DNA of 64,000 nucleotides from Botryllus schlosseri (Eukaryota): positions 806,001 through 870,000 of the forward strand of contig CM119386.1 in NCBI GenBank assembly GCA_051294905.1, given 5' to 3'. Below, piece by piece: positions 20,701 through 53,700 of the stretch. The notes below the pieces were generated by a model. That model did no database searches. It was not told the origin of the DNA and saw only the letters and a list, made by a program, of their open reading frames with translations. The position numbers and the translations under genes were made by a program. Within the stretch, counting starts at the first letter, position 1. Each line of letters opens with the position of its first letter.

Positions 20701-23700
20701 TAAGCTTACAACAGTAATTTAAGCAAACCTGTAGCTCCCATAGTTGTTGACACACGATTGCAAGCTCTCACAATTCGCAGTGCTCTCCGTGCATTCGTCG
20801 ACATCTTCACACGAGCCGCTGACATTTGTGAAGCCCGCTTTGCAATCACATCTGCACAGAAAACAATATTCTATATGCAGTTTCAGCTGTGAGATACATC
20901 AAATTTAGGGCTGTGCACAATAATTCATGTATATAAGTCGAGTCATTTGCAATTCACCACCAAGTCAAGTCAGCTAGTAGACAGCCGAGTCCAATTTTCA
21001 GTTCAATCCGTTTCAACCCACTTTTATCAACTCTGCCCGAGTGATATAGAATGTCGCGCATTCATAATATCATATTTCCTCAGTCAGTTAACAGTTTCTT
21101 AACAGTTTCTTAACAGTTCCTTAACAGTTTCTCGCCCTATTTTTCAAGCATCAGGACTGATAGACCAAATACCAATGATTTGACAACTTTACTATTCTTC
21201 GAAGTTACAATGTAATGTCGGTCTAGTCCGTCCTAGTCTCGAGTTATATGACTTGGTTTGACTCAATGAAACAATGACGCGAGCACAAGTCGAGTCAATA
21301 CAAAAATTGACTCAAGCCAAGTCGAGTCACCATAGAATCGCGACTCGGGTCGGCAATGCTAAATACATCGAACAGTATGAGAGAGTTTAACTTACTGGAA
21401 TGATCCTTGCAGATTTGCACAAGATTGAGTGGTCGCATTACACGGGTCGGTATCGCATTCATTGATATCGACGCATCCAATACTGGCATTGCCGCTGTAA
21501 CCAGTCTTACATTCGCACCTGTGAGAGATAGGTACTCACTTCAGAATTGATACTTAAATTGAAGAAGTAATGCCATACATTTCCACTCAATTACAAGTAT
21601 AAGCAGCAAATTCGAAAACATCACAAGCAGTGATATTACAAATAACTGCAAAACATATTCAGTTATCATAACCCAGTAGATATTCCACAGGCATGTTATG
21701 ATGACTATTTCACTGAAAAAAGTGACGAAAACTTGTATTGCAACCACTTTCTTTTTTTCATAATCAAAAGTGTACAAAAACTCGTTAAGCAGAAGTGGAA
21801 GTAACCTAAAAAGATAGTCAATACGGTAAACATTGATATATATAGTTCAGGGTTACATATCAAAGGAATACAAATACATGGTTGAGTAGTTAAAGAGATA
21901 CTTGGAGGTAGAGTACTTCAATACACAATTGAATAGTATACTCATATTGAAATAAACCTGAATATTTCCGACTGACACTCGTCAGGGGTAATCGTCAGCA
22001 ACTTGTTGAGAATTAAAACGAACATTGTACATCAAAAATCGTCGACTATGTATATTCAAGTCCATGGAAAATGGCGAAGCCACCAAATGTAACGGCAACC
22101 TACGTGTAGCTTCCAATTGAATTTTTACATTCGGTATTTGTTTGAGTTGTGCACGAGTCAGTAGCAACATTGCATTCATTGACGTCATTGCATGTGGTGT
22201 TGTCAGTGTCCAGCGTGTATCCAACATTGCACGAACAGATTGCTCCATTTGATTCGCTACTGCACACTTGAGAGCAGGTGTTATTCACGCAGTAGTCTGA
22301 AATGTAAAAGGTATAAATTTTTCACCTATTAGCAAACAGCTAGCAGATTGCTATAGCACTAAGCTGCCCATGAAATATGAGCAGAGTTTTCATTTATTGA
22401 CATTAAAAACGAGAATTTTTTACCTAAAAATTACTTTTGACATTAAATTTCATCGGTTATCCCATGAAATTGCTCTAAATACAAGACATCTGACTCAATT
22501 CCAACCCGTCTAAGCGAAGCTATTGGAGTCAAACATTTTGGATTTGCAAAAAATGATATTTATGGCGGGAAATTCTACTCTTAAAGCTTCGCTTCTGCGG
22601 GTGGAAATACAGCCAAATTTGCTATGCATCATTTTTAGACAAGGTAACAATTTCATCCATGGGATAGCATTTAAAATTCGTGAAACATTTTTAAAAATAT
22701 ATCTAATTTTTTTCACACTTATTTTTTTACACTGCTACATGTTGGAAGAGAGCCTAATTTGATCTACAACCTAACAATTTTACTAACCAGCCAGCTAAAT
22801 TCGAGAAAAGATTTTGTGTTTTAAGATAACCTTACAACACAGTGTTTCCGGAACTAGAAATTTCGAATTAGAATTGCCACGTGCCACGAGTATATACGTA
22901 CCGACAGCATAGCATTGACTCTCGATGAGGGTTTGCCCTTCTGGACAAGATGCATTGGCGCACGTGTATCCCGATAAGGGCGCGACATTGTCAACACAAA
23001 TACCAGTGGTGCAAGGCGAGGCGTCGCATTCGTTTCTGTCATCTTCGCACTTGACACCGGAATATGCATCGGTGCAGCTGCATCCGTAGATCTGAATATA
23101 AACGATAGGTTTGATTTTTTGATTGTCTCGACAGAAGCGACTAGAAATAAGGAGAATGAGAATAAGGCCCGATCCACAAGAGCAGATTCAAACGTAAGTT
23201 CAAAAATCATTCAAATATTGGATTCAACCAGCACTTAATATTAAATCTTACACTTTATAGCACCAAAATGACTTAAAACTGTCATCTCCATATCCAAATC
23301 TTTACATTATGTCTGAAAGCCAACTAATGAGTAAGTAAAATGTGTCTATTTAGGCTGTTTCATGCCTAGAAAAAGCTACCTAATGACTAAAAATAAAAAC
23401 GTGATTACTTTCACAGTACCCCTCACCAACTCATTACCAAAAGACAATCAAGTTTCGTAGTTTCTTGATGATTTATTTCAATCTTGCCCTTTCACGGACA
23501 CAATGTTTAAGAAACGTTGACTTGAACAGTTTGGTATGGTACATATTTCGCAGGCACAAGGAAAACGATACCACTTACACGCCATGCGAATAGTCTGGAG
23601 CATGGCTATCTATAGCGCAAATGCATGGCAAACAAAATTAAGGGATATATCGAGCTTAAATCAAGCGATAATCACTGTTGACCAACTCACAAAGTATCAA

Positions 23701-32700: not shown

Positions 32701-35700
32701 ACATGAAAGAACTTTATTTTAACATTACGCATTATCGTAGAAATAATTTTAAAAAATTTGTAGTACAACAAAAGATACTTTCCCACATTCTCGGGTAAAA
32801 ATTGTCTGTCCTTACTAAGTAGCTTGCCAAGAACGGAGAAAGAACGTTCAATAGCAGCAGCTGTTTGCTGACAACACTCAAGTTGTGCGTACACTGCCGG
32901 TGACAAACCGTGTTGCTTCTTGACATAAGAACCATGTAATGCCCACGCAGTCTTTCTTCAGTTAGGATATTGCAGTACGTTGAGCATAACACCATGTCAA
33001 CCTATTTGTTTCGTTTGAATGTTTATGATTCACAATGAGCCGACAATGGGCCGTCTACAACGGTAGGCCTATAAACTAGGTTACAAGCTGTAAAATGTCA
33101 AATGATAAGTTCACCGACAGTGCAACCATCTACGATACAAACGAAATGCAGGTTGCAAAAAAGTTTTAACTTTGTAAAAAAATTTGACATTTTTTGACCT
33201 AATTTTGACTTTTTTGACATGTCAAAAAAATTCGCCCTACTAATCAGCGATATCACTGTTAGGTCATCGAGTCAGCTGGTGATGTTGTACAGTGGGGTTG
33301 TTTCAAAATATTTTTTTTTCAGATTCCGGAAATTGATTGATTAAATTGTTAGGTTGCCTGAAAAACGTTGTACACCAAATTTGGCCCGATTCCAACAGGT
33401 AGATGTAAACGCACAGTTTCAAATTTTAGAATTTATTATAGAATTTTTTTTTCAAATTATACGGTCAACCCCATGAAATTGCCGAGTTGTCTACAAAGAA
33501 GATGCAAAAACCAGATTTAACATATTTCCAAGTTGTTTGAGTTTTTCATTCATAATTCTTGGATTACCCACAGTCCAGGCTATCTTTGCGAATCCAAAAT
33601 TTTCAACTGCAGCAACTACGCTTCTACCGATTAGGATTGAGCAAAAATTGGTAAGCATCATTCTTTTAGACAACGTAACAATACGATGTGGTTGACGGTA
33701 AAATTTTTAATTTTTATTTTCAATAAATTCAAAATATTCAATCCTCGGAATTCGTTTAAAAGAACCTACAGCACCTGAATACAAAATATCTTAGTTGATA
33801 AGATAATATTCATTTGTAAGTAGCAAACAAATTCAGTAGGCCTGTATTATTAGGTGCGATTGTGCATTCATAACCAACCGGACTAGCTTCCAAAATGGGT
33901 TGTTGTTCGGCCCACTGTCTGCAGTAGAGATCCACGTTCATTCCCTGGCCTGTCAGGTTACCGAGCATATATCCGAATACTCCGAGCTTGCCTGAAAAAT
34001 TAACGACCATTACTGTAAAATCTTGAAATAACAACAGCTAAAATGGCCCAAACTGGGTCCAGTGATTTCAGAATGAGTTAGCATGTCAGCAACGAAATAT
34101 CCACAAGGGTTACTTGGAAATTTCGATAAACTTGTAAAATATAGTTCTAGTTCTAGTTGCAGATTTTGAAAAGTGAGTAGTAGTAGTTCTAGTTCCTAGT
34201 TTTGAAAATGAGTGGTTCTAGTTCTAGTTGCAGATTTTGGAAAGTGAACAGCTCTAGTTCTAGTTCTAGTTAGGCATTTTGAAAAGTGATTAGTTCGAAT
34301 TTTAGTTGCACATTTTGAAATGTCAGTAGTTGTAGTTGCGAGTTGAAAAAAGAGTAGTTCTAGTTCTATCTCTAGTTGCACATTTTGAAATGTGAGTAGT
34401 TCTAGTTGTAGTTGCGAGTTTTGAAAATCCAGCAGTCTGTGCAAGTCTGGCTAAACTTGCCTGCGTTGGTGAAGTTGTCAGGGCGCATTGGGTCATCAAT
34501 GGCAATGCTAGATTGCTTCTCGAATGTCGAAGTCCAGCCCATCAAGGGCTCGAAATTGGGCAAGCGAATTCCGTGTTGCGCCTGCATTCCTTCCAGTTCG
34601 AACAGGAAGAAAGCGTATGTCACAGAACCGTCGGTCGTGAGCACCAGTTGGAATGTGTCATCCTGAAAAACATATGAAGACATCACTATTTTTCGTCATT
34701 TTTGTTAGTTAACCTAAATTTTCAAGAACTACAAACTAATTACAGCAAAATGCTTGTAATCTAATTTTAATCTAATTTGTGAAGTATTTTGCTCCAATTC
34801 TATTTCTATTTCGAACCTAATTTGTGAGATGTATTTATGTTCCAATCTAATTTCTGGATTTCCTGAAAATGCCACAGGTGAACTGTACTGTGTGAAACGA
34901 GCCAATCATGCCGTGTACAGACATTTGCTGTTATTATGCTTATGAGAATGGTCTCTGATTTGACATAAACTGAGCTTCATTCAATGTTCAATTTGCGAAT
35001 TCTGTAATTCTAATTCTAAATTGGGAAAAAAATGAGTAGCTATAATTCTGATTGTTATATAACTTGGGAAAATATGTATTTATTTGTCTGATTCTAGTGT
35101 AATTTGGAAAAAAAAACTGTGTAGTAATAACTCTAATTCTAATCATATTTGGAAAAGCTGGAAATTTTCTGTGTAAGACGGACGGCCATGTCTACGCTTT
35201 GACGACTATGTTACATCTAGCCTCGCATCTTTACCATGCTCATCAGCATATCACATTTTACGGAATTGCATTTTTATGTATGTTATCCTTTGACAAATAA
35301 AGATTCTCTCTCCCTCTCTCTTTAATTTGATGCCCATCGTAATTGCGACTTCACAATACCTGTGACGTAGGTCTGGCTTGGAACGTTACTTTCGCCACCA
35401 TGTTCTCCCAAGTAATCGTGATAGCTTCGACGGCTGAGTAGTCTCCGTTGCCCATGTAAGTCGCGACCAACTGGTTGATTTCATCGATCCGCTTCCGCTG
35501 ATAGAAACCTTGAAATAAATCACATTAATATTGACGTTGGGTTAAGCGTAAACGAATTATATCTTTAATTAAAATTTATTAGGGAGGTTCGGTCATTGTG
35601 ATAAAAAAAAACACAAAAAAGAATATACAGTCCAAAATATTCGGGTTGATTTCAATATGAATATATTATTCACTTCAATATACGAGATTAGAAATGGAAT

Positions 35701-38700
35701 AGCTTTTTGTATATTTATGTTCTCATGCAGATATCGAGACTGATTGAAATTCTCAATTACATATTTGTGCTTGAATTGGATAGAAATCAAAACATGCTGC
35801 TCTCGAAGCACTGGAATATATGCAAAGATTGGATAAAGCAACTGTGCATCAGCAACAGTGTGAAAGGAACAAGTCCATTAAAACATGATTTTCACAAAAA
35901 TCGAAACGATGATAATTAATATTTACTGGAAATCAGTTTGACTTGTGCTGGGAGAGTCGTTTGTGTCTCTAGAGATCCAGCGAAACCATGAGACTCGCTC
36001 AGCAAACCTTGGGTTAAGAAATACTGGACTAGAAGTACATAAAATATTTACCTCCTGTGCTGAGAGCATACTGATAGTGAATCCTTGTTTGGTCGGCAGT
36101 GAGGGCGTAGTCAGCATAGAAAGGTGATATTACTGCATGATCCACGCCAGACGATGTTGACAGTTGGTAGAATTTACCGGAACGCAGGAAGCTGTACAGT
36201 CTAGGCTCGTAGACGTCTCCTCTTTCGAGCACGATCGCGCCGTTGAACAGTATGTAGAATCTGGTAACATCGATTTGCAAGTCATTGAAGTGTCTCGGAG
36301 GTACAGAGCTTCTACATCTAATTGCATCATATATTCATATCGAGATAATGCAAACTATTTTTGGGTGAAGCTCGCCAAGGGGTAATCGTCAGCGACTGGT
36401 AGAGATTGCATAAGTACATTGTACATCTGTTGATATGTTCTTTAATATACATTCTTTTAAACAGACTCAGCAACAGAACAGAAATATTCAATTGAATAGT
36501 ATATTGATATTGAAATAACCCAAATATTTTCTGCTGACATTCGTCAGGAGTTATCGTCAGCACCTAGTAGAGAATTCAAAAGAACTTTTGTATATCTGCT
36601 GAGGAGTGTCAGTCGAAAATATTAGTGTTTATTTCAATATGAATTATTATTCGATTGTACACTCTTGTCTTTGACAATTCTTGAGATAGGATGAGTTGAT
36701 TTTAAATAGGCAAAATCAGACAAAAATTGCACTATGATGTTCATTTGCCTTTCTTGGACCCTTTCAAACTAGTACGCGGACCACAGTTTAAGAAGCACTC
36801 GCCTATAAACTGCTTAAACCAGCCAACACATCTCATTAGTACCTTTACGTACCAAACTATCGCCTTACTACCGTAAGCACCGAATTTTGCAAGTTGACAA
36901 ACTGTATCGCTTCGAAGTATCAAAAGTCATTCACAAATATTTTTCCAATAGCTCGCTTCCTGTGTTTGATGACTTTTTCATGCCTGCTAAAAATGTCCAC
37001 TCCCACTACACGAGATCTTCGTCTAAAGGAAATATCTACTTACCCCCACCCAATAGCAACCTAACCAAGAGATCTATTGACTACTCCGTACCTATCATCT
37101 GGAATGCATTACCACCACATATCCGTGAATTGCCTTATAATAGATTCAAAAAAGCCCTGTTTGACCACCTCTTGTCGTTACACTAACACTGTTGCCCTAC
37201 CTCGCCCAGACATTGCTTCATTGATCATTTGCTACCATCGTTTAATTTTTTAATTTTATTTTATTAACTACCGTAACATTTTTTACAGCCAGACCGTTTA
37301 GAGTCAAGTGTACATGTTTGATGCTGGTGTGATCAGACTAGATGACCTTCACGGTCTTATCGATCATTCCTATCTAATACCGAATACTGTGCATGCATAT
37401 TTTCTGTACCACCACCACTGCCGTGTGTTATTTATTTTGGTTGGATGAAAATAAAGACTCTCTCTCTCTCTCTAAGAGACTCCTGCAGATACCAAACATT
37501 AATATACAACGCATCTCCAGCATACGTAACTAAGGAGTTTGAATAGGTAAGAAATTAAAGGGAAATGAGTTTAGGCACGATACCTGTCATACGATCTTCC
37601 TCCGAACACAAAATCTGTGTCAAACGTCACATAGTCTACTAGCTGCGATGGATTTGCAGAGTTGGAAGGAGTGTATTCATATCCGGGCGGAGAGTTGTAA
37701 TCAAGCAGGATGGTTTCTGTTCACACAAAATCAAACCCACGTATCAAACATTGATGCAAAATATTTAATACCAAATCTCCAGTATCATACCGATGCACGT
37801 ATTTCCATCATCTGACAGGTAGTAGCCTTGTTGACACGTACAAATGTACCCGGGTTCTCTGTTAACGCACAATGAACCTGACGCGGGACAAGCGTCAGCA
37901 TTTTGACACTCGTTGATGTCCTGTGAAGTAAATTGCATCACATAAGACACGGGTTCAACAATTTTTTTACATCAAAAATTAGTCGCCTTCCACAGTGGAG
38001 AATAGTATCGTAAATATAACTCTCGTTGATAAATTAACTCTGGCAAAGGAGCGTATAATTTCAGAACTCGAAAAAATCATATCTTACTACTCGACTCGAA
38101 TCATTTCAATCAGTACTTGATTCAGATTCGAGTACATAAATCATTGCGCCAACCCGACTCTAGATAAAAAAGTAACTTATTGCTGTAATAGCATATTTAG
38201 TCAATTTTATTTTTGTTATAGTGGCGTAGACTTAGCGATATATGTATTTTCAAATTCTTTCATGGTCTCTTAGGGAGCAATGGCTCGGAGGTTCGAAACC
38301 CCTGTTATAAATCATTACGTATCTCGTGATGTCATCATGTGGATCATACCGTGCAGTTTTGAGAGCCGCTGTATCCATCATAGCATTCACAGTAGTATCC
38401 ATTTTGTGCGTCATTGACGCAGTATCCATTTTCACACTCTGCGGTGGAGCAATCTTTTTCTGTACAATATCAAACAATATAGATAGACTTGACCCAATGT
38501 GACCATGCCGGTGCTGTCCCAGCAAACTCAACATCACGATATTAAAATAGACAGGAAGGAGTTAATCTCCAAAATAATAGAAATGATATATACGGTCATA
38601 TGTACGGCTATGTTCAATAATATGTATAACGATTAATTTGAATTTCATATGTAGGCCTACATTGCATAGATATATCCGAAACATGCGTATTGCATATGTA

Positions 38701-41700
38701 TATATGACTTGGCAAATCTCTGCTATTAAAGATTTAAATTTATCCTTACGTGTCAAACAACGAGGTCCCGAGAATCCTTCATCGCAGGCGCACATTACAT
38801 GTCCAATATTATCTGTCGAACAAAGTCCCCGGCCATTGCATGTTGCATTGGAGCACTGTTCCACCACGCAGCATTTTCTGGACGTAATATATGCTGTAGT
38901 AGCTTTGTAATGATAGGTATCACACGATTTTACTCACGGAGACAACGCCGATTGCACATAACCAGTGCGGCAAGCACATGACTGTACAACATCATTGTTT
39001 TCAATTTGAATCGAACATATCTAGAAAGAAATGAAATTTTGATAAACTGTATTCATAATGAATTTCAATGCTCTCTTAACATGAATAAACCACATACCCA
39101 AAGCTATATGAATCAGACATGTGTCGTACAAACTACCGATCTAATTAGTAGACAGTCAACTAACTAGTGTCTTTTTTAAAATAGTTCTAGTTCTAGCTCT
39201 AGTTGCGTATTTTGAAAAGTGACTAGTGAATCTATTCAGTTATGTTATGTGAGTTACTTTTGGAATTTGAAAGGTCTTTAGTCATAGTTTTAGTTGCTAG
39301 TTTTGAAAACTGAGTAGTTTTAGTTCTAGTTGCAGTCGCACACTTTGAAAATCCAATAGTTTGTACCAGTCTGGTATCAAATATCCTTATTCTTTAAAGA
39401 GTCTGCTGAAACTTCAATTTGGCCAAGAAATTCGTGCGAAAATTACCTGCTGGCATCCATATTCAGAACACGAAGGCGTGCTTGCAACACAGACATCAAG
39501 CTGTGCCGATTGGTCGAATCCATCATTACAACGACATCGCTTCGACAAAGTCGCGTCAAGATAGCACACAGAGTCGGAGTTGCAGTATAGCTGATCGTCG
39601 CATGGATTCGTTGCTGGAATCGAAAATAATGCAATGTTATTTTAGAAAGATTGGTCATTCTTTGTGGTAGGATAAAATTATATGTATCGAGTTTCCACAT
39701 CATTTATACCGTTATGTTGTCATAATGAGTGGCTCTCAAATACTCCACTCGAAGCCTAATACTCGATACACAATCAAATCACTCAGGTTTTGGTTTTGAC
39801 GAGCCATATTTATGAGGAACAACTTACGTTGGCACGATACACCGTCTTGTGAAAGTGAGAAACCATCTTCACAGCTACAGGTGAAGCCGTCTCTTGTGTT
39901 GGCGCACGTGTGAGAGCAATTGTGTTCTCCATGATTGCAGTGATCGAATACTGAAAATAAAATGATAGTACTCATTAACACAGACAGCCATGGGTTGAAA
40001 CATTGTTTAAAATGTGTAGCGTATGAAGAAATGAACCAGTTGGAGACTTAGAGCTATGATGTTTGAAGCAGAGTTGAAATAGAAACTAGCTTTTCGAAAT
40101 TAGACTGGAATTATAATTTTAGCAACACAGATTTTTTCCGAATTAGATTAAAATTACAATTACTGAATTTGCATGAACTTCGAAAATGAATTAAATTCCG
40201 AATTAGAAAGAAATACAACAAAAACTAGATTAGAATTAGATTTAGGCATTTTGCTCTTATTAGTCTAACTAGTCCAATACATTTTTCTAGAATTGTTTAG
40301 TTTCTAAAGTCTGGTTTGAAGACTTACCACAGTCAGTGCGTGGTGCCGCATTTCCAATGTCCGTATAGCCGCAATCGCATTCACAAATGTAACTGCCAAA
40401 AACGTTCATGCACTCTGCATTGGCGCCACATAGCCCTTCAGTTTCGCATTCATTGACATCTAATGCAATAAAATATCAAGTCAGTATGTGTTCCTTCAAA
40501 CCAACAAGCTAAAGCCCGGGTAGGTTCAAAGATTTGATTGAGCTAGAATTATATAGAGACTTCTTACACACCCAATGTCTTTAATCAACACACTGACACA
40601 TCTAGTTTATGGTTAAGAATAAATGCAAGCTGCTAATGCGACAAAAGTCAGTATACCAATATACTACATAGATTTACGCTACACATAGCATACATATATC
40701 ATGCAAAAATGAATGATCTCCAGAAATCATAAACTAAAATCATTGGATGAACTCGATGACGATAAGAGACAATACTATCAAAATTTAATATATAAATTAG
40801 GTAATTTGAAAAAATTATAAAAATTGCACCATGCTAGCAAAAATGTCTGTTAGTTGGCACGCGAAATAACTGTAAACATATTTTAAATAAATAACAATAA
40901 CATGTATAAATGGCTAGCCCTTATTCTGCTTTTGAATACCTTAAGCATCACCTGATATTTAAACACCCATTACTAGGTGGGCATGCAGCTATAAAATCGT
41001 TTTGACATGAGTCGGTTTGATTTTGTACAAACACTCTAGATTAGATGAATTACCATCGCTAGTAACCAACAACAGAGCATTGCTCAATGGACAATTTTAA
41101 CAATGCAGCAAGCTGCGTTAACTACAAATATTGCTTAACTAACACAAAATTCAAGCACTATACAACAAATCCAACTGGATCATCTATTATTTCAAGAGAC
41201 CCATTGAAATATGCCACGTCTGCAGCTACCAACTACAGAGTACGCAGGGCAACTAAAATCATTGCAATATCTTTCAGCATCAGATACCTTGACGCACAAT
41301 TGCATAATTAAATGAACCCGAATATTTTCGGCTGACACTAATAATTATTTTTCATCACTGTGCATTGGAGTGGACTTTAATCAAGTTTGTTGAGCTTAAA
41401 CTCTCAGTTTGCTTCGATTATTTATATTACCATTGATGTGACGTCGTATTTCGAGGTACGATTGTCAATAAACAATGCTCTATACAATACTCTACTAGTT
41501 GCGGGTCATCAACTGTGACGAGTGTCAGCCAAATGTATTCGGGTTTATTTCAATATGACTATGTTATATTTTATCCAGAAGCTTCACACATCCAAGATCG
41601 TCATCAAATACCTAGATATCTGACAAAAATTTTTGCTTCATTAGCGTTTGATTTGTTAAGCCGCATACAAACCAATTCCTGCCACTACTGCGTCATGCTC

Positions 41701-44700
41701 AGCAAATATATGATATGTAAAGCAACCTTGACAAAATCCTGACGTTTGTACGAGACCGGAATCGCATTCGCAGCTAAACGAGCCGGGCGTGTTCCTGCAG
41801 GTTGATCCCTGCGGGCATTGAGCACTTTGCGTTGCGCATTCGTCAATTTCGTGACAGGTTCCGTTCGTAAACCAGTATCCTTGATCGCAATCGCACGCAT
41901 AACTTTCCCCTAAAATTTGACATAAGCCGCTCTGTCCGCAGTTATCAGGGTTGCACGGTGATATGAGATCGCAATTCTGCCCGATTCGCCCCTCTTTGCA
42001 TTGACAAATATACTGGCCTCCTGGGATATTGATGCAATCCTCATTCGCTTGACAAGGCACGCTAGAACACGAGTCGAAAATGCAGTCGATACCATCACCG
42101 ATGTAATTTGTGTCGCATGCGCAGGAGTAACTGCCCACAGAGCTCGTGCAAACCGCATTTTGATTGCAAGGAAGTGAGAGGCATAGATCAATCTCAAAGC
42201 ATCCTTGCAGTCCGCCAGTATATCCTTGCGGACATGTACACTTGATCTGCCCGTTTTCAACGCTGCACGTTGCATTTACGCCGCAAGGATTATTATCGCA
42301 AGGCTGTACTTCTATGCAATCTCCATTTTGTCCTGCGATATATCCTTGCAGACAGGTGCATTCGTATGATCCAACTGCGTTGATGCAATTCGAGTTTGAT
42401 CCACAGGTACCGTTAAAGGCACATTCGTCTCTATCTATACATGCGTTTTCAGCTTGATCATTCACAAATCCTTCTTTACAGCGGCATACATAGCTTCCGA
42501 TTGTGTTGAAGCATGTTTCATTTTCACTGCAGATGTCAGAAATCTCCTGGCATTCATCGATGTCAAAGCAAGTAGTTCCAATAAGACGGAATCCAGAGTC
42601 ACAATTACATTCGTAGCTGCCATCTGTGTTGTTGCAAGAAGCGTTATCTTGACAAGGAGAGTCGAGGCATTCATTGACGTCAACACAAGAATCAATTCCA
42701 TTTCCAGAGAAACCTTGTTGGCAGCTGCAATACGTGATTTCATTGCTTACAAAGCAATCTGCTTCAGGCAGACACGGGTTAGCAACTTGGCACGGGTCGA
42801 CAGGAATACAAAATCCGTTAATCTCTCTGTAAGCTCCGTCACAAACGCATTGATACGACCCAGGTTGGTTTTCACATCTGTAATTTCCGTCGCATGGTGC
42901 TGACAAGCATTCATTGATATCCACGCATATATCTGTGTTATTACTAGGTTGGTATCCGTCAATACATTGGCACGTATAACTACCAGCATTGTCAACACAT
43001 ACTGCAAAATTTCCGCATATGCCTTCAGTAGCGCATTCATTAATGTTTCGACAGTTTTCACCTGTATAACCAGCATCGCATACACACTCATACGATCCGA
43101 ATTTTTCGTTGCAATCAGCATTTAGCGGGCATGGATTATTGTCACATTCCGGTATATCGATACATGTGTTATTTGTATATTGCAATCCCGCTGCACATTG
43201 GCAAGTACTAGAATTTCCAGAGGCTACGCATTGAGACAGCTGAGGGCAAGTGGTGCTAGCGCATGGATCAACACTCGTGCACACTTCACCATTACCAAAG
43301 AATCCTTGATCGCAGATACATTCAGATCCTCCGTAAGTGTTGTAACATCGCGCGTTATCGCTGCACAGCGCTGGTCTGATTACCACTGTTCTGCCCTGGT
43401 AGGTCACGTTACACTCATTTCCACACGATTCTCTTGATATAGAAACGTTGTCCCACGAGATAGTATTCAGGATCAGGTTAACGGCATTTTGACCTGCACA
43501 CTCATTGAAGTCTACGCATGAAGTAATGCCGTCTCCTAATAAGCCGCTTTGACACTGACATTGACGAATTTCAGGTCCATTGCTGTCACGTCTTACAAAT
43601 ACGCATTCTGCCCCATTATCCAAGCATACATCGTTTCCGCAAAGTGCTGTAAAGAAAAGAAAAAGTTGTAACATGAAACTATCAGCTTTGGGAATCAGTT
43701 AATTGGTGATGTAACGGTGAAATCTGTACAGAGCAATTGTGTTTCAATCTTCGAAAACGCGATCCAGGTGTTATTTTGCAGGTTTTTCACATTAAATCTT
43801 GATGGCAAGACTGGCAAAAATAAAAAATAAAATTGGTTCGGCGTCGGCAAGGTCAAACTTGATATATTTTTGTCAAAAAATTTTGATGACTTGGATGACA
43901 TGAGACTCAACTGAGAGTCACTATGTTTGTCTTGATAATGATTGAATGTTGGTTGAATACAGATCAGCGTCCTAGAAAGATACTAAATTGCAGTGTTTGG
44001 GATGTATTTTATTATAAATGAAATTAGAGGCAATGAAACTAATCAGTATTGGAGATGACTATTTTAACCACCTTGGCGCTCTGCATTACCGAGAGAGCAT
44101 GGAGCAGTGATGCAAGACTTAGAAATCCTTACAAGGATATTTCTGCACCTTCCTTGTCCAGCGCCATATGCATATCACGCACTCATGGTATACATATGTA
44201 CAGATCGTGTGTCTGTATACCATGAGTTGATGTCATACCGCAAAAAAAATTGAAGACAAAAATATACAACGTTCTATTCTACTTTTAAAGCTAACCACCC
44301 ATTTATTTATTTATCTTACTTACTAAAGCTACGAGAATTATTACCTTTGCATGTGTTGGCGACATATATGAATCCAGCTTCACATTGGCAAAAGAACGCC
44401 CCATCTGTGTTCTCACATGTAGATGTTGGGCCGCACACAGCATTCTGCCCGGCACACTCATCAATATCTTCGCATGTGCCGTTCGTGAATTCATATCCTT
44501 GCGCACAATCGCAGGCGTAAGTCTCTCCCTGTATTTGACAAACTCCGTTCTGTCCACAGTTGTCTGGGTTGCACGGTGTGATCGGATCGCAATTCTGTCC
44601 GAACCTGCCTTCCTTGCACTGGCAGACGAACTGACCTTGGAAAGTTAAGCAATCTTCATTCTGTCCGCAAGGATCGGTGGTGCACCAGTCGAAATCACAG

Positions 44701-47700
44701 GTAATTCCGTCTCCGGTATAGTTTGTGTTGCATGTGCAGAAGTAGCTGCCAACCGTGTTGGTACAGACGGCATTGTTACGATCGCACGGGAAGGTAAAGC
44801 ATTCGTTGATATCAAAGCAGTCTTGGAAACCGCCCGCAAACCCTTCAGGGCAAGTACATATGGTCTGTCCGTTCTCAACACTGCATGTTGCATTTGCACC
44901 GCACGGATTATTATCACAAGGTTGTACTTCAATGCAATCTCCATTTTGTCCTGCGGTATATCCTTGCAAACATGTGCATTGATACGAACCGGGTGTGTTT
45001 ATGCAGTTAGAGTTTGCTCCACATGTACCATTGAATGCACATTCATCCTTATCTATGCAAGCATTAAGGATTTGATCATGCACGAATCCTTCTTTACAAT
45101 TGCACACAAAGCTTCCGAGCGCGTTGAGGCATGTTTCGTTTACACTGCAAGTATCAGTAGATTCTTGGCATTCGTTGATGTCAAAACAAGCTGTTCCTAA
45201 CAGACGGAATCCAGAATTGCAGTTACATTCGTAGCTACCATCTGTGTTGACACAAGACGCGTCATTTTGACACGGTGAGTTTAGGCATTCGTTAATGTCG
45301 AAACAGGAATCAATTCCATTTCCAAGGTAACCTTGTGGGCAGCTGCAGTACGTAATCTCGTTGCTTACAAAGCAATCCGCTTCGGGGAGACACGGGTTAG
45401 CAACTTGGCACGGATCAACTGGAATACAGAATCCATTAATCTCTCTGTAAGCTCCGTCACAAATGCATTGATACGATCCAGGTTGGTTTTCGCATCTGTA
45501 ATTTCCGTCACATGGTGAAGATGAGCATTCGTCGATATCTTCGCATATACTGGCATTGTTGCTAGGTTGATACCCGGAGATACATTGGCACGTGTAACTC
45601 CCAACAGTGTCCAGGCATGTCGCAAAATTACCGCATATTCCTTGCGTCGCGCATTCATTCGTGTTTAAGCAGTTTTCACCTGAATAGCCCTCCTGGCAAC
45701 GACACACATATGAGCCGAATGTGTCGACGCAATCAGCATTTTGTTGGCACGGATTATTGTCACATTCCAGAATGTCGATGCATGAATTGTTTTGATATTG
45801 CAATCCAGAAGCACATTTGCACGTTGCCAGCCCGTCTGTTTGATCGCAGAAGGCTAGTTGCGGACAGGTTATGTTTTCACAAGGATCAACTTGAGCACAA
45901 ATTTCACCATTGCCAAAGAATCCGTTATCGCATACGCATTCAAACCCTCCGTAAGTGTTGTAGCAACGTGCGTCGCTATCACACTGTGATGGTCTGACAA
46001 GCGCTGTTCTTCCGTTATATGTTACGTTACATTCACTTCCACATAATTGCCGGGTGACAGACACGTTTTCCCACGAAATAGACTCCAATACAATGTTGAC
46101 GGTAGTTTGACCGGTGCATTCGTTGAAGTCAGTGCACCATGTCACGCCATCTCCAACTGTACCACGTTGGCATTCGCACGCTCGTATTCCCACACCGTTT
46201 TGATCAATTCCTTTCAGCACACATTCAGCACTGTTTGCGAGACAGATGTCGTTTCCACAAAGCTCTGAAATAGGAAATGAAATTTAATGGTACTAATTCC
46301 TTGTATATATGATAAGAATTGAATAATATATTCCTATTGAAGTAATAGAGGTAATCGCGAGCGACTAGCAGAGAATTAGAAAGATCAAGTTCAATTTTAT
46401 ATTGACGTTGTGTACTACAATAGTCCCCAGAATCCGGCAAAAAGTTATTTTTGAACAACACTTAAGACCACCTCTGGACTTACTTCCCCACATTTTATGA
46501 AAGGATTACCCCAATTATTGCATAGCCAATTTGAAAAGTGATGACGTCTTGAAATAGGATGGAAAGTTTTAATCAAATCGACAGCTCAAACCTACCTTTG
46601 CAAGATCCATCCATTTCAGCGAAACCGAGATTGCATCTGCATGAGAACGAGCCTTGCGTATTCTCACAGTTAGAGTTTGGCGGGCACACAGCATCTTGTC
46701 CACTACATTCGTCGATATCTTCGCAGGTTCCATCGGTAAACCAATATCCTTGGTCACAATCGCAAGTGTATGACGTTCCTTCTATACGACAAATGCCGTT
46801 GAGTCCGCAATTATCTGGATTGCACGGAGTGATCGGGGCGCAATTATCTCCAATCCGTCCCTCTTTGCATTGACAGGTGTATTGTCCATTTGCCATATTG
46901 ATGCAGTCTTCGTTTGCTGTACACGGGCTGCTCGAACATGAGTCAAAGTCGCATGTCTCCCCATTTCCGATAAAGTTTTCGTTACATGCGCAGAAGTAAC
47001 TGCCGATTGTATTTGTGCAGTTAGCGTTTATATCACACGGAAAATCACGGCACTCGTTGATATCTGTGCATTCTTGGACGCCACCGCTGTATCCATCGGG
47101 ACAAGTACACCTGATTTGACCATTTTCAACGGAACATGTAGCGGTTGCACTGCATGGGTTTCCGTCGCATGGTAATACCTCTATACAGCCTCCATTTCCG
47201 TCATCTCTGTAATCTTGTGAGCATGTGCATTGGTATGACCCAGGTGTGTTATCACATTCCGCGTTAGCTCCACAAGTGCCGTTAAAAGCGCATTCGTTCC
47301 TATCGACGCAATCGTTTTGACTTTGACTTGTGACATATCCGTCTTTGCAGTTGCATGTAAAGCTTCCGATTGTGTTTAAGCAGTATTGTGTTGTAGTGCA
47401 ATCGTGGGAGCCCGTTTCGCACTCATTGATATCATTACATTCACCTCCAAATGAGAAAAATCCGGGATTACATTCGCACGTAAAACTGCCAGGTATATTT
47501 GTACAGTCAGCATTATTTGGACATGGTGATGAACTACATTCATCCACATCGGTACACGAATCTTTTCCGTTACCAGTAAATCCAGTAGGGCATATGCAGA
47601 ATGTATCATTGTGTGACACAACACATTCAGCTTGCTGTAAGCAAGGATTCACATCACGGCACGCATCGACTGGCACACAATCTTGATTGATTTCCCTGAA

Positions 47701-50700
47701 TATACCATCGCACACGCATTGATAACTGCCAGGTTCATTTTGACATCTGTAGTTTCCTGAACATGGGGACAACAACTGACATTCATCGATATCTTCACAT
47801 ATATCGGCATTTCCACTTGAAAAATACCCGTCCAAACATTGACATCTGTAACTTCCCGCAGTGTCTTGGCATCTTGCAAATTGTCCGCATATGTCGAAGT
47901 CTACACATTCGTCGATATTTTCGCAATTTTCCCCGGCAAAACCTCGATCGCAAGTGCAAAGATACGAGCCATACGTTTCGGTACAGTTGGAATTATCAGG
48001 ACACGGACTGGTTTGACATTCTTGTACGTCAACGCATGCACCGTTAAAATACCGTAGTCCTGGCGCACATTCACAAGTCGATACTCCTTGGTTTACGACA
48101 CAGATTGCGAATTGAGGACAGGTAATGTCTTGGCATGGATCCACAATGGAGCATATTTCGCCATCACCAAAGAAGCCTTCTTCGCATACGCATTCAGACC
48201 CTCCGAATGTATTGTAACAACGTGCGTTGTCACTGCATCTTGCCGGTGTGATTAACGCTGTTCTTCCGTTATACGTTATTATGCATTCGTTTCCGCATGA
48301 TTCTCTCGATATTGTGACATTTTCCCATGAAATGGATTCAAGCACAAAGTTGTTAGTGTTTCCACCGGTACATTCATTGAAGTCTAAGCACCATGTAACA
48401 CCGTCTCCAACAACACCATCAATGCATTGGCATCTATGAATCTGTTTTCCGTCGTTGTCATATCCTTGCGATACGCATTCAGCCACGTTGGCAAGACATC
48501 TGTCATCTCCGCATAGTTCTTTTAAAAACACAATTTTCAATATGAAGATTCATAGTTTCACGGATATCATGAATGAAAACTGACAACATTCATATACCAT
48601 TTGCACACCGAAGTGATTTGAAAATGAAAAGCAGTTGAATGGTAATGATGTGACAAAATTAAGACATAGCAAGATTGTAAGTGGTGCAAAATGTTATAAC
48701 GCATTATCAAGTTATTACTTGTAAACAGATGCGTGATCAAAAATGTTATTAGGTATTAAGAGCACAACTAAGGCCTACTGGTCAATCCAAGCAATAAAAC
48801 TATGTAGAAATCTCACAAACACATTTTAGTACGCTCACCATGTAATGATATTTTATCAATAAATAATTATTACTGGTTAATCCACACTGTAAAACTATGT
48901 AATCGGTAAAAAAGATGTTCAATGAAATCCCACAGACTGATTTTAGTACTCACACCAAGTTACATGTATTATAATAATATGATTATTAATAGTATTAACT
49001 GAAGACAGGAAAGCATCAAGTACAGTGCAGTGTGCACAATGCAAACATCTAAATTAACCACTGATCAAGCTGGAATATCCACGATAACCTACCAAAGTTG
49101 CACACCCAAAACTTGGCTTCAAGTATACCAGGGTCGATGTGTATTTACATCACACACAATTAAGGCAACTGGCACACACAAGGAATAGTACTCGCACAGT
49201 CAAGCGGTTACAAGAATTTTCAATTCCCCACATGAGAATTCTTTTGATTCTCCAACCATGGAATACAGTATTGGCAATGTTCTCAAACATACCCATCCAA
49301 AAGTGACATCATTAATATATTTACCTAAATATATATTACACGGTATAGACTGGGAGACCCGATATAACCGAAATCTTCAAGGCCGGAGTCATTCAAGTAT
49401 ATTTGGCGGTAATAATAATAATAATCAATTTCTTCCCTCATTGAAGTAGCAGAGCAAAAAGTGAGGAACCAAAACAAAATTAAACAAAGCAGAACAATAC
49501 TAATGAAGGAAAGAAAACTTGACAGGTTAAATAATTTATTACTTGAAGATCTTGTGTCAAATGCATAGCTGGTCAGTATGGAAGCGCTTCTAGTGCTTAC
49601 AAGAGTGCACCCAAGAATTTTGTTTCCTTCAGGCAAGCTACACCCTTTCCATTTATCAAGCAACATTTGCAACACTCACAAATACGAAATACCATTCATC
49701 CGCTCACACTCACAACATTACTCCCAAACAGCCATCAACAATAAGATAACCGTAATAGGAGACTCACCTGTGCAAACCCCGTCTACCTCTCTGAAACCAG
49801 GACTGCATTCACAGAAGTACGAGCCATCTGTGTTTCGGCAGGTTGCTCCAGGACCACACACCGCATTCTGTCCGTTGCATTCATTGATATCGCTGCATGT
49901 ACCGTTCGTGAACCAATAGCCTTGCTCGCAGTCGCACGCATAAGTTGTTCCCAATATCTGGCATATTCCGTTTGGCTCGCAAAAATTTGGGTTGCAAGGT
50001 GTGATAGTGTCGCAGTTATCTCCGTACCGTCCTGTCTTACATTGACACCTGTGCTGTCCGCCTATGATGTTGAAACAGTCTTCATTCTGTGTGCATGGGT
50101 TGGTTGAACAGGAATTGAAATCGCAGTTAAATCCGTCCCCGCTGTAGTTTTCTCTGCATGTGCAAGTGTATGTACCAGGAGAATTAACGCAATCGGCGTT
50201 GACATCACAGGGGAAGTTGAGACATTCGTTGATATCTGTACATTCTTGTATACCCCCTGTATATCCTTCACTGCATGTACACTTAGTCTGGCCGTTTTCC
50301 ACAGTGCATGTCGCGTCTGCGCTACAAGGATCATTATCGCATGGTAAAACTTCCACACAGATTCCATTATCATTTTCTTTGAAGCCATCCTTACAGCTAC
50401 ACCCGAAATTTCCAACCGTATTGGTACACAGCGAATTCTCCCCACAGACACCAAACACAGCGCATTCGTCTGTATCAATGCAGTCTTTACGGTCGTTGCT
50501 GTATTCAAATCCTGCTTTGCAGTTGCAGAGAAAGCTTCCGGGTGTGTTTAAACATGTTTGGTTTGAAGAGCAATCGTCAATACGCCTTTCGCACTCAGGT
50601 ATATCTCTGCATTGTCCTTGAATGAGTTCATATCCGGTATTGCATTCACAAGAGTAACTTCCATCCGTGTTTGTACACTGTGAGTTTTGTGGGCATGGAG

Positions 50701-53700
50701 AAGTTTGTAAGCATTCGTTGATATCAGTGCAATTGTCTCTTCCGTTGCCAGTATAACCCTCAGGACACAGACACACTGCGTCATCGTCAGCAACCACGCA
50801 TTCCGCTTCTTGAAGACATACTTCTGCGTCGTCACACGGTTGTACTTTTACACATTGATCGTCAATCATACGGAATTCACCGTCGCATATACATTCGTAG
50901 CTGCCTGGATTGTTTTCACATCTGTAATTCACACCACATACTGGAGACGTGCATTCATTGATATCTTCACACTGATTTCCGATTTTGCGGTATCCCGAGT
51001 TACATTCGCATATGTAACTTCCTTCCGTGTCCTTGCAAGTCGCATCATTTCCGCAAATTGTCGGGTTCAAACATTCATTTATGTTTACGCAGTCATCACC
51101 AAAGTATCCTTCAAGGCAGGCGCAACGGAACGAGCCGAATATTTCATCGCATTTCGCATTGGCTGGACAAGGATTGGTTTTGCATTCTTCAACGTCGATG
51201 CATGTGTTGTTGGAGTATCGCAGTCCGTTTGCGCATTCACAAATCGCAGATCCTCCCGTCCTTACGCATTGAGAAAGGTCTGGACAAGTTATCGCACTGC
51301 AAGGGTCGGTTTCAGTACATATTTCTCCATCCCCGTAGAATCCACTGATGCATGAGCATTCATATCCACCGTACTCGTTCAAGCATATCGCGTTATCACT
51401 GCAGTTTGCCGTTCTGACGGCAGCTGTTTGTCCGTTGTAAGTGATATTGCATTCACTGCCACACATTTCTCTTGACATGGAGACGTTTTCCGATGAGACA
51501 GTGTCCAGCACCAAGTTCAGCATGTTGAGACCGGAGCATTCGTTAAAATCAATGCACCAGTTAACACCGTCACCGATGGTGCCGTCCAGACAGTGACAGC
51601 TTTCGATTTTCTCTGCTTTCATATCATCGTATACAGAAATGCACTCAGCTTTGCTTGCTAGGCAGATGTCTTCACCACACAGTTCTGTAATGATACATGC
51701 GCTGTTGGTAATCAGAAGCATATTCTCAATGTATTCTAACACGAATTTGTAAAGCCTCAATGCTGTTAGTATATAATTAGGCAGTATGTTCATATTGAAA
51801 TAAACAGGAATAATCGTGAGCATGCTCTTAATATGATGTGTGGCATGATTACAGAGGCTTTTGAAGTAGTTGACAGTGATACTTGGTCAAAATAAATGTA
51901 ACGCCCAAATATTCTAGTCGATTTCAAGTGGAAGTACTGATTTCCGAGACATATCAAAATTTCTTCAATTGGAAGTAGCGCAAAACCTAATAAATACTAT
52001 GAAAAAGTAGAAATACTTCATTACTGACCACGTCTGGCCACTAAGGAGGTTCAAAAGGAACAGAACATTTTTAGTTTAAGGTAATAAAGACACCAAATGT
52101 TATGAAACTTTACAGTGATCCATTGATCCATCACTGACTTGTCGCTTTAACTTATTTCAATTAGTATTATTATTTCGATTTCAGTTACATATTGTAATCC
52201 TCTCAATGCAAGGAATTCCCGATACTTGGAGAGTGGAAAAAATGGTGGTGATGGTGATGATAAAGCATATTATATTGCTTGCACCAGACACTAACAAGCT
52301 CATTCGTTCTTTGAATCTAGATATACCTTTACAGAATCCATCCACATCACGGGAACCTTCAGGACAGTCACAAAAGAACGATCCTTCCGTGTTGAAGCAT
52401 TCATGATCGGACACGTTGCATTGTACAAACTTGCACTCGTCAATATCTGAGTTGATTTAAGAGTCAAATTCAATTCGATAATCAAAAACTGCAGTATGGC
52501 ACTTACCCTCGCATTCGAAAGTGATATCGCTGTATTGAAAGCCATCTGAGCAGTTCAAGGTCTAAACATGAAACGTTTACGTATCATTGAACTTGGTAGT
52601 AACTTGTAACTGTAAAGAATTGACCCAAAACTCTCCTTTTAATTCTAAACTAATTCCTGGTTTTCCTGAAAATGCTACTGGAGAGCTGCATAGTGCGAAA
52701 CGAGCCAAGTTCGCTGGGCAGACATTTCCCATTCTCGTGCTTATTTAAATAGATTCTGATTTCTTATGGAGTGAACTTGATTTTTGTTGTATTTCTTCCT
52801 AATTCGGAATTGAATTCAATTTCCAAGGTTTTCAGAATTATATAGTTCTAATTCTATTCTAATTTAGAAAATACTGTGTGGCTATGAAGCTAATTCTAAT
52901 CCAATTTCAAAACTTGAGCGTTTTAGTTGTCCAAATGTGATATTTATTTCTATACATCTTGTTTTGCTTTGTGTATCACTGAGTAAAAGCGATACAATTT
53001 ATATCTACCATCAGACACATAGGTTTGAATTCAGACTTACGCGGTTGGAGTCGGGAGCCACAGGTGGCGGTGGCGGTATGATAGTTGGCGGAGGAGGCGG
53101 GGGACAGATTGTCGGCTTGGTTTCATTGATTTCAAATGTTGGTGGTGGCGGCGGAAGCACTGGTGGTGGCGGTGGCACCGGAATCGTGCCGTTCTGAATA
53201 TACGGGTTACAAACACATTACAATGTATTTAAAATTGCCTAGGTCCTAGGTCATTGCACAGCAGCTCTAATTAGATGTGATACCAGCATGTGTAAAGTTT
53301 GTTAAATACCAATACTGAAAAACACTTGCACAATACCTACGGTTAGACAAACATATTATAATCCATAAGACTGCAAACTAATGACTTGAATTTTGACAAA
53401 TTGAATTATTTTCAGCGAATTACACAAGTAGGTTTTGTCTACCCGCACTACTTTCTCATGTTGTTAAGCTACTACTTCCACGGCTACTTGATTATTTTTT
53501 TTAGGCAAAACTAGGCCTACAACACATACTTTTTACTTACTTTGAAAGTACTAATTCTGCTTGAACTCAAGTAAAAATTTTAGATGTTGCTCACAAACCA
53601 GGGATCACCAACACGCAGCACGCATGCAGCCAGTGGCCTGATTTTAGATCTTCGGAGAACACTTAGTAAAGCATTCATAAATGCTGAAATTGATTTCAGC

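What the first reader, a model, noticed from the sequence alone, without database searches (positions are those of the whole stretch)
43366..51535. Novel 44-residue Cys-containing loop between C1 and C2 of a cbEGF, conserved in all four giant exons
Seen at 51404-51535, 48238-48369, 45984-46115 and 43366-43497: DFNEC-[x9-L(D/E/N)(S/T)(I/V)S(W/S)(E/D)NV(S/T)xxRxxCGxECx(I/V)TYxGxTxxxxxxx]-CSDNAxCxNxxGGxECxC. Established: cbEGF C1-C2 spacing is normally only a few residues. The loop keeps its exact length, a CGxEC pair, an N-glycosylation sequon and an alternating hydrophobic pattern. Inference: a folded beta-rich mini-domain grafted onto the EGF, and a candidate ligand-binding site.
Basis: partly seen in the sequence, partly recalled or inferred. 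Interest (0 to 1): 0.75.

Follow-up and report, generated by a model that had tools for sequence, protein, structure and literature searches.

The report
Conserved 44-residue insert in EGF domain
One calcium-binding EGF domain in each of four repeated giant exons of a large, expressed extracellular-matrix gene carries a conserved 44-residue insert with two extra cysteines; it is real and restricted to this lineage, but it is an extreme case of a known kind of loop expansion, and neither its fold nor its function is established.

Summary
On the minus strand, four tandem exons (1917-1923 nt, all phase 1-1) each encode 15 EGF domains with 92 Cys. The second EGF of each is a DFNEC-type calcium-binding EGF.

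Contigs that behave as cDNA splice the exons in series and keep the insert. The insert evolves under purifying selection like the neighbouring EGFs (pN 0.21-0.27, pS 0.56-0.82). Its composition is of the ordered type, and it has an invariant N-V-S/T sequon and NG and (E/D)N turn motifs.

AlphaFold2 drew two beta hairpins in the second of two runs (only the second hairpin in the first), but at pLDDT 23-39, so the fold is not shown.

The insert has no Pfam, PDB or Atlas match. Among 1.84 billion proteins, only one unnamed 666-aa ORF from a public read assembly carries it. The 495-Mb genome holds only these four copies.

Long C1-C2 loops are rare but not unique: about 2% of 1,254 sampled cbEGFs have 15-28 residues there.

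Verdict: a lineage-restricted, extreme, Cys-bearing variant of a known kind of loop expansion. Ligand binding is untested. The scan had already noted the four exons (s1-300887).

The parts
49768..51684 (-). Giant exon A (1917 nt, phase 1-1, 15 EGF domains, 92 Cys)
   Evidence: Open frame. AG acceptor and GT donor. Its 3' end is joined to exon B in RNA contigs, seen as a loose end at 48520 that matches the end of exon A in 26 of 27 letters.
46596..48518 (-). Giant exon B (1923 nt, phase 1-1, 15 EGF domains)
   Evidence: The joint 46264/46596, bounded by GT..AG on the minus strand, is seen in contigs of three runs.
44345..46264 (-). Giant exon C (1920 nt, phase 1-1, 15 EGF domains)
   Evidence: Joints 46264/46596 and 43646/44345.
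41727..43646 (-). Giant exon D (1920 nt, phase 1-1, 15 EGF domains)
   Evidence: Joint 43646/44345 in a contig of run X5.
51317..51550 (-). Insert-bearing cbEGF of exon A (DFNEC to C6, 78 aa, 8 Cys)
   Evidence: Translation. Pfam EGF_3 37.2 bits and EGF_CA 27.6 bits, aligned from C2 onward only.
48151..48384 (-). Insert-bearing cbEGF of exon B
   Evidence: alignment.
45897..46130 (-). Insert-bearing cbEGF of exon C
   Evidence: alignment.
43279..43512 (-). Insert-bearing cbEGF of exon D
   Evidence: Pfam EGF_3 36.4 bits from C2 onward; EGF_CA 22.7 bits, below its cut-off of 27.
51404..51535 (-). 44-residue insert, copy A (CGSEC at 51449-51463; NVS sequon at 51479-51487)
48238..48369 (-). 44-residue insert, copy B (CGNEC at 48283-48297; NVT sequon at 48313-48321)
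   Evidence: Covered without a break by RNA contigs of runs X5, X6 and X10.
45984..46115 (-). 44-residue insert, copy C (CGSEC at 46029-46043; NVS sequon at 46059-46067)
   Evidence: Covered without a break by RNA contigs of runs X5 and X6.
43366..43497 (-). 44-residue insert, copy D (CGNEC at 43411-43425; NVS sequon at 43441-43449)
   Evidence: Depth 16.5 in X5 over 43300-43499.

Best explanation
The four intervals encode a lineage-restricted 44-residue insertion in the C1-C2 loop of the second EGF domain of each 15-EGF module. That domain is a calcium-binding-type EGF. The modules belong to one large secreted multi-EGF protein, and the four exons are spliced in series.

Shown: the insert is translated sequence kept in mature RNA. 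It predates the duplication of the four exons. It has been held at exactly 44 residues under purifying selection as strong as on the EGF domains around it.

Inferred: it forms a small N-glycosylated beta structure of two hairpins. Hairpin 1 turns at the (E/D)-N of the invariant N-V-S/T sequon. Hairpin 2 turns at N/Q-G within TYxG. The structure is tied by one extra disulfide, either within CGxEC or by re-pairing with C1 and C3. The C1-C2 loop leaves the EGF right after the DxNE calcium ligands, so the insert would sit as a lateral knob beside the calcium site at the junction with the preceding EGF.

On this reading it is either a brace for that junction or one of four periodic glycosylated surface features along the rod. 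A specific ligand is not indicated by any data.
For: - Anatomy and exact coordinates. Each exon has 92 Cys (15 x 6 + 2), and the other EGFs have C1-C2 spacings of 4-6.
- Splice sites are AG/GT with phase 1-1.
- Contigs of runs X5, X6 and X10 have near-zero depth in most of the introns and show GT..AG joints at 43646/44345 and 46264/46596. A loose end links exon A to exon B. The contigs run unbroken through the inserts.
- Selection: in the insert pN is 0.21-0.27 against pS 0.56-0.82; in the rest of the exon pN is 0.16-0.30. Outside the Cys columns, 26% of insert columns are invariant against 28% in the rest of the exon.
- An outside homologue, P0001, has the same 15-EGF layout and the full 44-residue insert, scoring 89 bits in a single stretch.
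- Composition lies on the folded side of the charge-hydropathy plot, with a low TOP-IDP mean.
- AlphaFold2 draws strands at the CNVTY/RTxxI hairpin in both runs and at the xLxxISW/VSxxR hairpin in the second run.
- The insert is not a degenerate EGF: hhalign probability 0.8%.
Against: - AlphaFold2 confidence over the insert is very low in both runs (block means of pLDDT 23-39). A flexible loop therefore cannot be excluded.
- The disulfide pairing is not determined.
- Only five sequences exist, so covariation cannot be used.
- The aromatic residue of the cbEGF consensus (two residues before C4) is present in only 2 of 5 copies, so calcium binding is itself assumed from the motif.
- No data bear on any binding partner.
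- The runs used as RNA evidence are not labelled as RNA. Their cDNA nature is inferred from low intron depth and canonical joints.
Confidence: 0.55

Rival explanations
1. The insert is a flexible, glycosylated surface loop without a defined fold. It would resemble the long disordered C1-C2 loop of the complement C1r EGF module or the protease-sensitive inserts of short fibulins, serving as a spacer or glycan carrier.
For: AlphaFold2 gives pLDDT 23-39 over the insert in two runs. Other organisms' long C1-C2 loops are rich in N-glycan sequons and look unstructured.
Against: - There are no indels in five sequences whose synonymous sites are saturated.
- 13 of 44 columns are invariant across the five sequences, including two Cys, Y, T and G.
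- Hydrophobic residues alternate, and the composition is of the ordered type.
- The same AlphaFold2 runs also gave pLDDT below 50 to the ordinary six-Cys EGF before it, so low confidence reflects the shallow alignment.
Confidence: 0.2
2. The domain is re-wired rather than simply expanded. The second insert cysteine would take over the role of C1 and pair with C3. The DFNEC cysteine would pair with the first insert cysteine, closing a separate 24-residue N-terminal loop. The result would be an 8-Cys EGF variant with a new disulfide map.
For: Pfam EGF models align only from C2 onward. A CxxxC pair is an uncommon geometry for an internal disulfide (own knowledge). The spacing from the second insert Cys to C2 is 15 residues, within the range of long C1-C2 loops seen elsewhere.
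Against: The DxNE calcium ligands are normally held against the C3-C4 hairpin by the C1-C3 disulfide (established knowledge of cbEGF structure). The DFNEC motif and the Asn after C3 are invariant in all five sequences, which fits a canonical calcium site. No data decide between the two pairings.
Confidence: 0.2
3. The 132 nt are not part of the mature protein: a small intron or exitron, or an annotation artefact of reading through.
For: None found. The idea was raised only because 132 is a multiple of 3.
Against: Contigs with spliced introns run unbroken through the inserts of exons B and C, and none of the joints listed lies at an insert boundary. The pattern of protein-level conservation, with pN far below pS, also argues against it.
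Confidence: 0.02

Closest known systems
Canonical calcium-binding EGF domain (Pfam PF07645 EGF_CA and PF12947 EGF_3; fibrillin, Notch and NELL type)
   Same: It has the D-x-N-E-C start, the C2-C6 core with C4-x-C5, an Asn two residues after C3, and a GF/Y-x-G-x-G tail. The best solved relatives are NELL2 EGF domains, aligned from C2 to C6.
   Different: It has 44 residues and two extra Cys between C1 and C2. The usual spacing is 4-8, seen in 94% of 1,254 sampled domains. Pfam models cannot bridge the insert.
Modified N-terminal cbEGF of the short fibulins (fibulin-3, -4, -5)
   Same: A cbEGF that tolerates a long lineage-specific sequence insertion inside the domain (PMC12527114, PMC2778585).
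   Different: The fibulin insert lies between C4 and C5. It is proline-rich, lacks Cys, and is protease-sensitive (PMC12527114, PMC2778585). The insert here lies between C1 and C2, carries Cys, and has beta-type composition. There is no sequence similarity.
cbEGFs with long C1-C2 loops: the complement C1r EGF module (own knowledge, not checked here) and unannotated proteins P0024, P0038, P0104, P0065, P0016 and P0120
   Same: The same loop is expanded. Several of these loops carry N-glycan sequons and an aromatic residue. P0120 has two extra Cys in a 23-residue loop.
   Different: Those loops are 15-28 residues long, and none matches the insert profile: only P0001 did among 1.84 billion proteins. 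This insert is the longest seen and is strictly conserved in length.
Laminin-type EGF (LE) domain split by the laminin IV (L4) domain (own knowledge)
   Same: A precedent for a folded module grafted into a loop of an EGF-like domain, and for 8-Cys EGF variants.
   Different: It is a different EGF subtype. The graft is a full globular domain of about 200 residues at a different loop, and it is not homologous to this insert.

Membership tests
Calcium-binding EGF (PF07645 / cbEGF consensus) | N-terminal D/N-x-D/N-E/Q-x-C1 motif | tested here: met
   DFNEC is invariant in the four copies and in P0001.
Calcium-binding EGF (PF07645 / cbEGF consensus) | EGF core C2-C6 recognised by curated profiles above their cut-offs | tested here: met
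   EGF_3 scores 36.4 and 37.2 bits (cut-off 28.5). EGF_CA scores 27.6 bits for copy A (cut-off 27) but 22.7 for copy D. Alignments start at C2.
Calcium-binding EGF (PF07645 / cbEGF consensus) | Asn/Asp after C3 and an aromatic residue two before C4 (C-x-D/N-x4-F/Y-x-C) | tested here: inconclusive
   The Asn is invariant. The aromatic position reads S, F, S, Y, S in D, C, B, A and P0001. A Tyr or Phe four residues after C3 is present in all five.
Calcium-binding EGF (PF07645 / cbEGF consensus) | Short C1-C2 loop (4-8 residues) | tested here: not met
   The loop has 44 residues with 2 Cys. The background is 4-8 residues in 94% of 1,254 domains and 4-7 in 81 other domains of this genome.
Calcium-binding EGF (PF07645 / cbEGF consensus) | Disulfides C1-C3, C2-C4 and C5-C6, and bound calcium | not testable with these tools
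   This needs disulfide mapping, a structure, or a calcium titration.
Any curated domain family for the insert itself (Pfam-A) | Profile match to the 51-residue segment DFNEC-insert-C | tested here: not met
   No Pfam family at E up to 10. PDB profile search has best E 0.69. No usable Atlas hit.
Bacterial MBG-type adhesin repeat (lead from the hits P0002-P0005) | Significant single-repeat similarity to the insert | tested here: not met
   Each stretch scores 4-12 bits, with per-stretch E-values of 1e4-1e6 for the library. The low whole-protein E-values come from 10-16 near-identical repeats.

The most novel reading that the evidence does not exclude
The 44 residues form an autonomous, disulfide-stapled, four-stranded beta mini-domain of a fold not yet described, grafted into the C1-C2 loop of a cbEGF. 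Repeated once per 15-EGF module, it would give a giant matrix protein (said in earlier scan notes to be from a sea squirt) four periodic, glycosylated binding or self-assembly sites.
Probability: 0.2. Interest if true: 0.5.

Novelty: new variant of a known kind. Interest (0 to 1): 0.3.

Why it matters
EGF domains are among the most common extracellular modules. Their inter-cysteine loops are where specificity is built in: glycosylation sites, RGD loops and fibulin inserts all sit there. A 44-residue insert with two Cys that is kept under selection in the C1-C2 loop, next to the calcium site, would extend what this scaffold is known to tolerate. If it is folded, it would add a small new disulfide-rich element. 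At present it is known from one gene in one genome plus one unnamed contig, with no functional data. Its value is therefore as a curiosity for EGF structural biology and for annotating this giant matrix gene, not as an answer to an open question.

Tried and rejected
- Plus-strand reading of the coordinates gives stops; the feature is on the minus strand.
- Word-indexed homologue search with the insert region of exon D found no candidate.
- With the 165-aa alignment, the only hit was a generic cbEGF fragment, P0006, with a 13-residue loop. I considered it as an intermediate form. The own genome has no close copy of it, only generic EGF matches at 43-61% identity, so I dropped it.
- With the full-exon alignment, only P0001 is close (58% identity). 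The next hits are generic EGF arrays at about 35% or less.
- A metagenome contig scan with the insert profile found no relative.
- The bacterial MBG-type repeat proteins P0002-P0005 from the 1.84-billion-protein search are repeat-multiplied chance matches.
- The insert as a degenerate EGF remnant: hhalign probability 0.8%.
- The insert as an intron or exitron is contradicted by the RNA contigs.
- Two AlphaFold2 runs had mean pLDDT of about 50 and 23-39 over the insert. This was too low for a meaningful fold search, so none was run.
- Atlas feature searches returned only generic EGF clusters, or nothing.
- Literature searches found no cbEGF with a structured C1-C2 insertion, no paper on this gene, and no paper naming run SRR25569784.
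- The organism was not verified. Earlier scan notes call it a sea squirt.
Full report
**Observation**

On the minus strand they lie in four long open frames.

Splice-site inspection gives four exons:
- A: 51684-49768
- B: 48518-46596
- C: 46264-44345
- D: 43646-41727

Their lengths are 1917, 1923, 1920 and 1920 nt. Each is bounded by AG and GT, and all are phase 1-1.

Each exon encodes 15 EGF domains with 92 Cys, which is 15 x 6 + 2. The two surplus Cys lie in the second EGF. After an invariant DFNEC come exactly 44 residues, including CG(N/S)EC, and then a normal C2-C6 core.

**Is it unusual?**

- Within these exons, the other 14 EGFs have C1-C2 spacings of 4-6.
- In the window plus ten other EGF-rich loci of the same genome, 81 other distinct cbEGFs have spacings of 4-7, and only these four have 44.
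- In 1,254 cbEGFs from 119 EGF-array proteins of other organisms, 94% have 4-8 residues.
- About 2% of those have 15-28 residues. Several of these loops are rich in N-glycan sequons, and one (P0120) has two extra Cys in a 23-residue loop. A single 41-residue case in a fish fibrillin model does not look like a real domain.

So the premise that the loop is normally short is right, but long C1-C2 loops are a recurring rarity. This one is the longest seen and the most strictly conserved.

**Is it expressed and part of the protein?**

Contig sets of three public runs (X5, X6, X10) are not labelled as RNA. They have depth on the exons and near-zero depth in most of the introns. They contain joints 43646/44345 and 46264/46596, with GT..AG on the minus strand.

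A loose end at 48520 matches the 3' end of exon A in 26 of 27 letters. Thus A, B, C and D are spliced in series.

Contigs run unbroken through the inserts of exons B and C, and depth covers the insert of exon D. None of the joints listed lies at an insert boundary. One bulk RNA run read as raw reads (X23) had almost no coverage, so expression depends on the sample.

**Selection**

Synonymous sites between the four exons are saturated (pS about 0.8), so the duplications are old.

In the insert, pN is 0.21-0.27 against pS 0.56-0.82. This is the same range as the rest of the exon, where pN is 0.16-0.30.

Outside the Cys columns, 26% of insert columns are invariant across five sequences, against 28% in the rest of the exon. 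The insert has no indel in any sequence, but indels are rare throughout the exon, so exact length is not a special signal.

**Relatives**

- A profile of the segment found only the four copies in the 495-Mb genome.
- Against 1.84 billion representative proteins, it found one true relative, P0001. This is a 666-aa ORF on a 4.3-kb contig assembled from run SRR25569784. It scores 89 bits in one full-length stretch.
- P0001 has the same 15-EGF layout and a 44-residue insert with the Cys pair, both sequons, W, TY and NG.
- P0001 is 56-58% identical to all four exons, and its place in the tree is unresolved. C and D are sisters.
- I could not determine its organism.
- The other four hits are bacterial adhesin-type repeat proteins. 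Their low E-values come from 10-16 repeats each scoring 4-12 bits, so they are chance matches multiplied.
- Word-indexed searches, a metagenome scan, Pfam, PDB sequences and the Atlas gave nothing for the insert.
- The insert is not a decayed EGF (hhalign probability 0.8%).

**Structure**

Two AlphaFold2 runs with five-sequence alignments gave mean pLDDT of about 50, and 23-39 over the insert. In the first run, the ordinary six-Cys EGF just before it was equally poor. This points to a shallow alignment rather than demonstrated disorder.

Both models draw a hairpin at CN(V/I)TY / (R/Q)Txx(I/V), turning at N/Q-G. The second model also draws a hairpin at xLxx(I/V)SW / VSxxR, turning at (E/D)-N, where the invariant sequon lies.

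Composition is on the folded side of the charge-hydropathy plot, and the mean TOP-IDP score is 0.01-0.08 against a threshold of 0.542.

I regard a two-hairpin, glycosylated, disulfide-tied unit as the most likely form, at roughly even odds. It is not shown. The disulfide map is open: an internal CGxEC bond, or re-pairing with C1 and C3.

**How it would work (inference from established cbEGF structure)**

The C1-C2 loop leaves the domain directly after the DxNE calcium ligands. An insert there would project sideways at the junction with the preceding EGF, once per 15-EGF module, so four times along the rod. A role as a junction brace or as a periodic glycosylated surface feature is plausible. 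Nothing here points to a specific ligand.

**Comparison with known cases**

- The core is a member of the EGF/cbEGF families by motif and by Pfam score, but it fails the short-loop feature.
- Short fibulins carry an insert in a cbEGF, but between C4 and C5. That insert is proline-rich and protease-sensitive (PMC12527114, PMC2778585).
- The long C1-C2 loop of the C1r EGF module and the laminin LE domain split by an L4 domain are precedents from my own knowledge, not checked here.

**Context**

Earlier notes of this scan had already recorded the four exons (s1-300887) and an array of Pro-rich micro-exons upstream (s1-300930). Those notes describe the genome as a sea squirt's, which I did not verify.

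Downstream on the same strand lie small EGF exons, a NIDO-domain exon (27 bits) and a 1,421-aa Ser/Thr-rich open frame. Whether all of these belong to one gene was not tested.

**Verdict**

The feature is real, expressed, constrained and lineage-restricted, and it is an extreme, Cys-bearing variant of a known kind of EGF loop expansion. Its fold and function are open. Interest is modest.

Noticed in passing
window 34402-34686 (-); also 39736-39981, 38562-38867, 37765-37950, 22100-22288, 19284-19742, 18665-19072 (-): A NIDO (nidogen-like) domain exon (PF06119, 27 bits) and several single-EGF exons lie downstream of the four giant exons on the same strand. They may belong to the same gene.
   Followed up: partly
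window 6847-11112 (-) and 11933-12427 (-): A 1,421-aa open frame of degenerate Ser/Thr-rich repeats (mucin-like), plus a second S/T/P-rich ORF, lie further downstream on the same strand.
   Followed up: no
window 44100-44299 (intron between exons D and C): Very high depth in the contig sets that behave as cDNA (347 in X5, 202 in X6), and raw RNA reads with loose ends at 44149. This suggests a repeat or a separately transcribed element inside the intron.
   Followed up: no
window 44476 / 47779: One X6 contig joins exon C to exon B across 3,302 nt with non-canonical ends (TG..TG) and only 22 letters on one side. It is probably an assembly chimera between paralogous exons rather than splicing.
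   Followed up: no
window 51560-51684, 48394-48518, 46140-46264, 43522-43646 (-): first EGF of each exon: Each giant exon starts with an atypical six-Cys EGF that has a 14-residue C3-C4 loop. AlphaFold2 also modelled it poorly. Together with the insert-bearing EGF, it makes the head of each module distinct from the other 13 EGFs.
   Followed up: partly
G000:C10 near 3,142,760-3,149,986 and G000:C9 near 7,468,832 (loci L013, L014, L006): Other EGF-rich open frames of 4,001 and 3,302 codons without a stop exist elsewhere in this genome. Giant EGF exons are therefore not unique to this gene.
   Followed up: no
window 44921-45416 (exon C): RNA contigs from different samples differ from the assembly at up to 20 of 496 positions (about 4%). 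This indicates high polymorphism, or collapsed paralogues, in this exon.
   Followed up: no
proteins P0024, P0038, P0104, P0065, P0016, P0120: Unannotated EGF-array proteins from other organisms have cbEGFs with C1-C2 loops of 20-28 residues. Many are rich in N-glycan sequons. In P0038 a 20-21-residue loop recurs in four successive modules. They are unrelated in sequence to this insert.
   Followed up: partly
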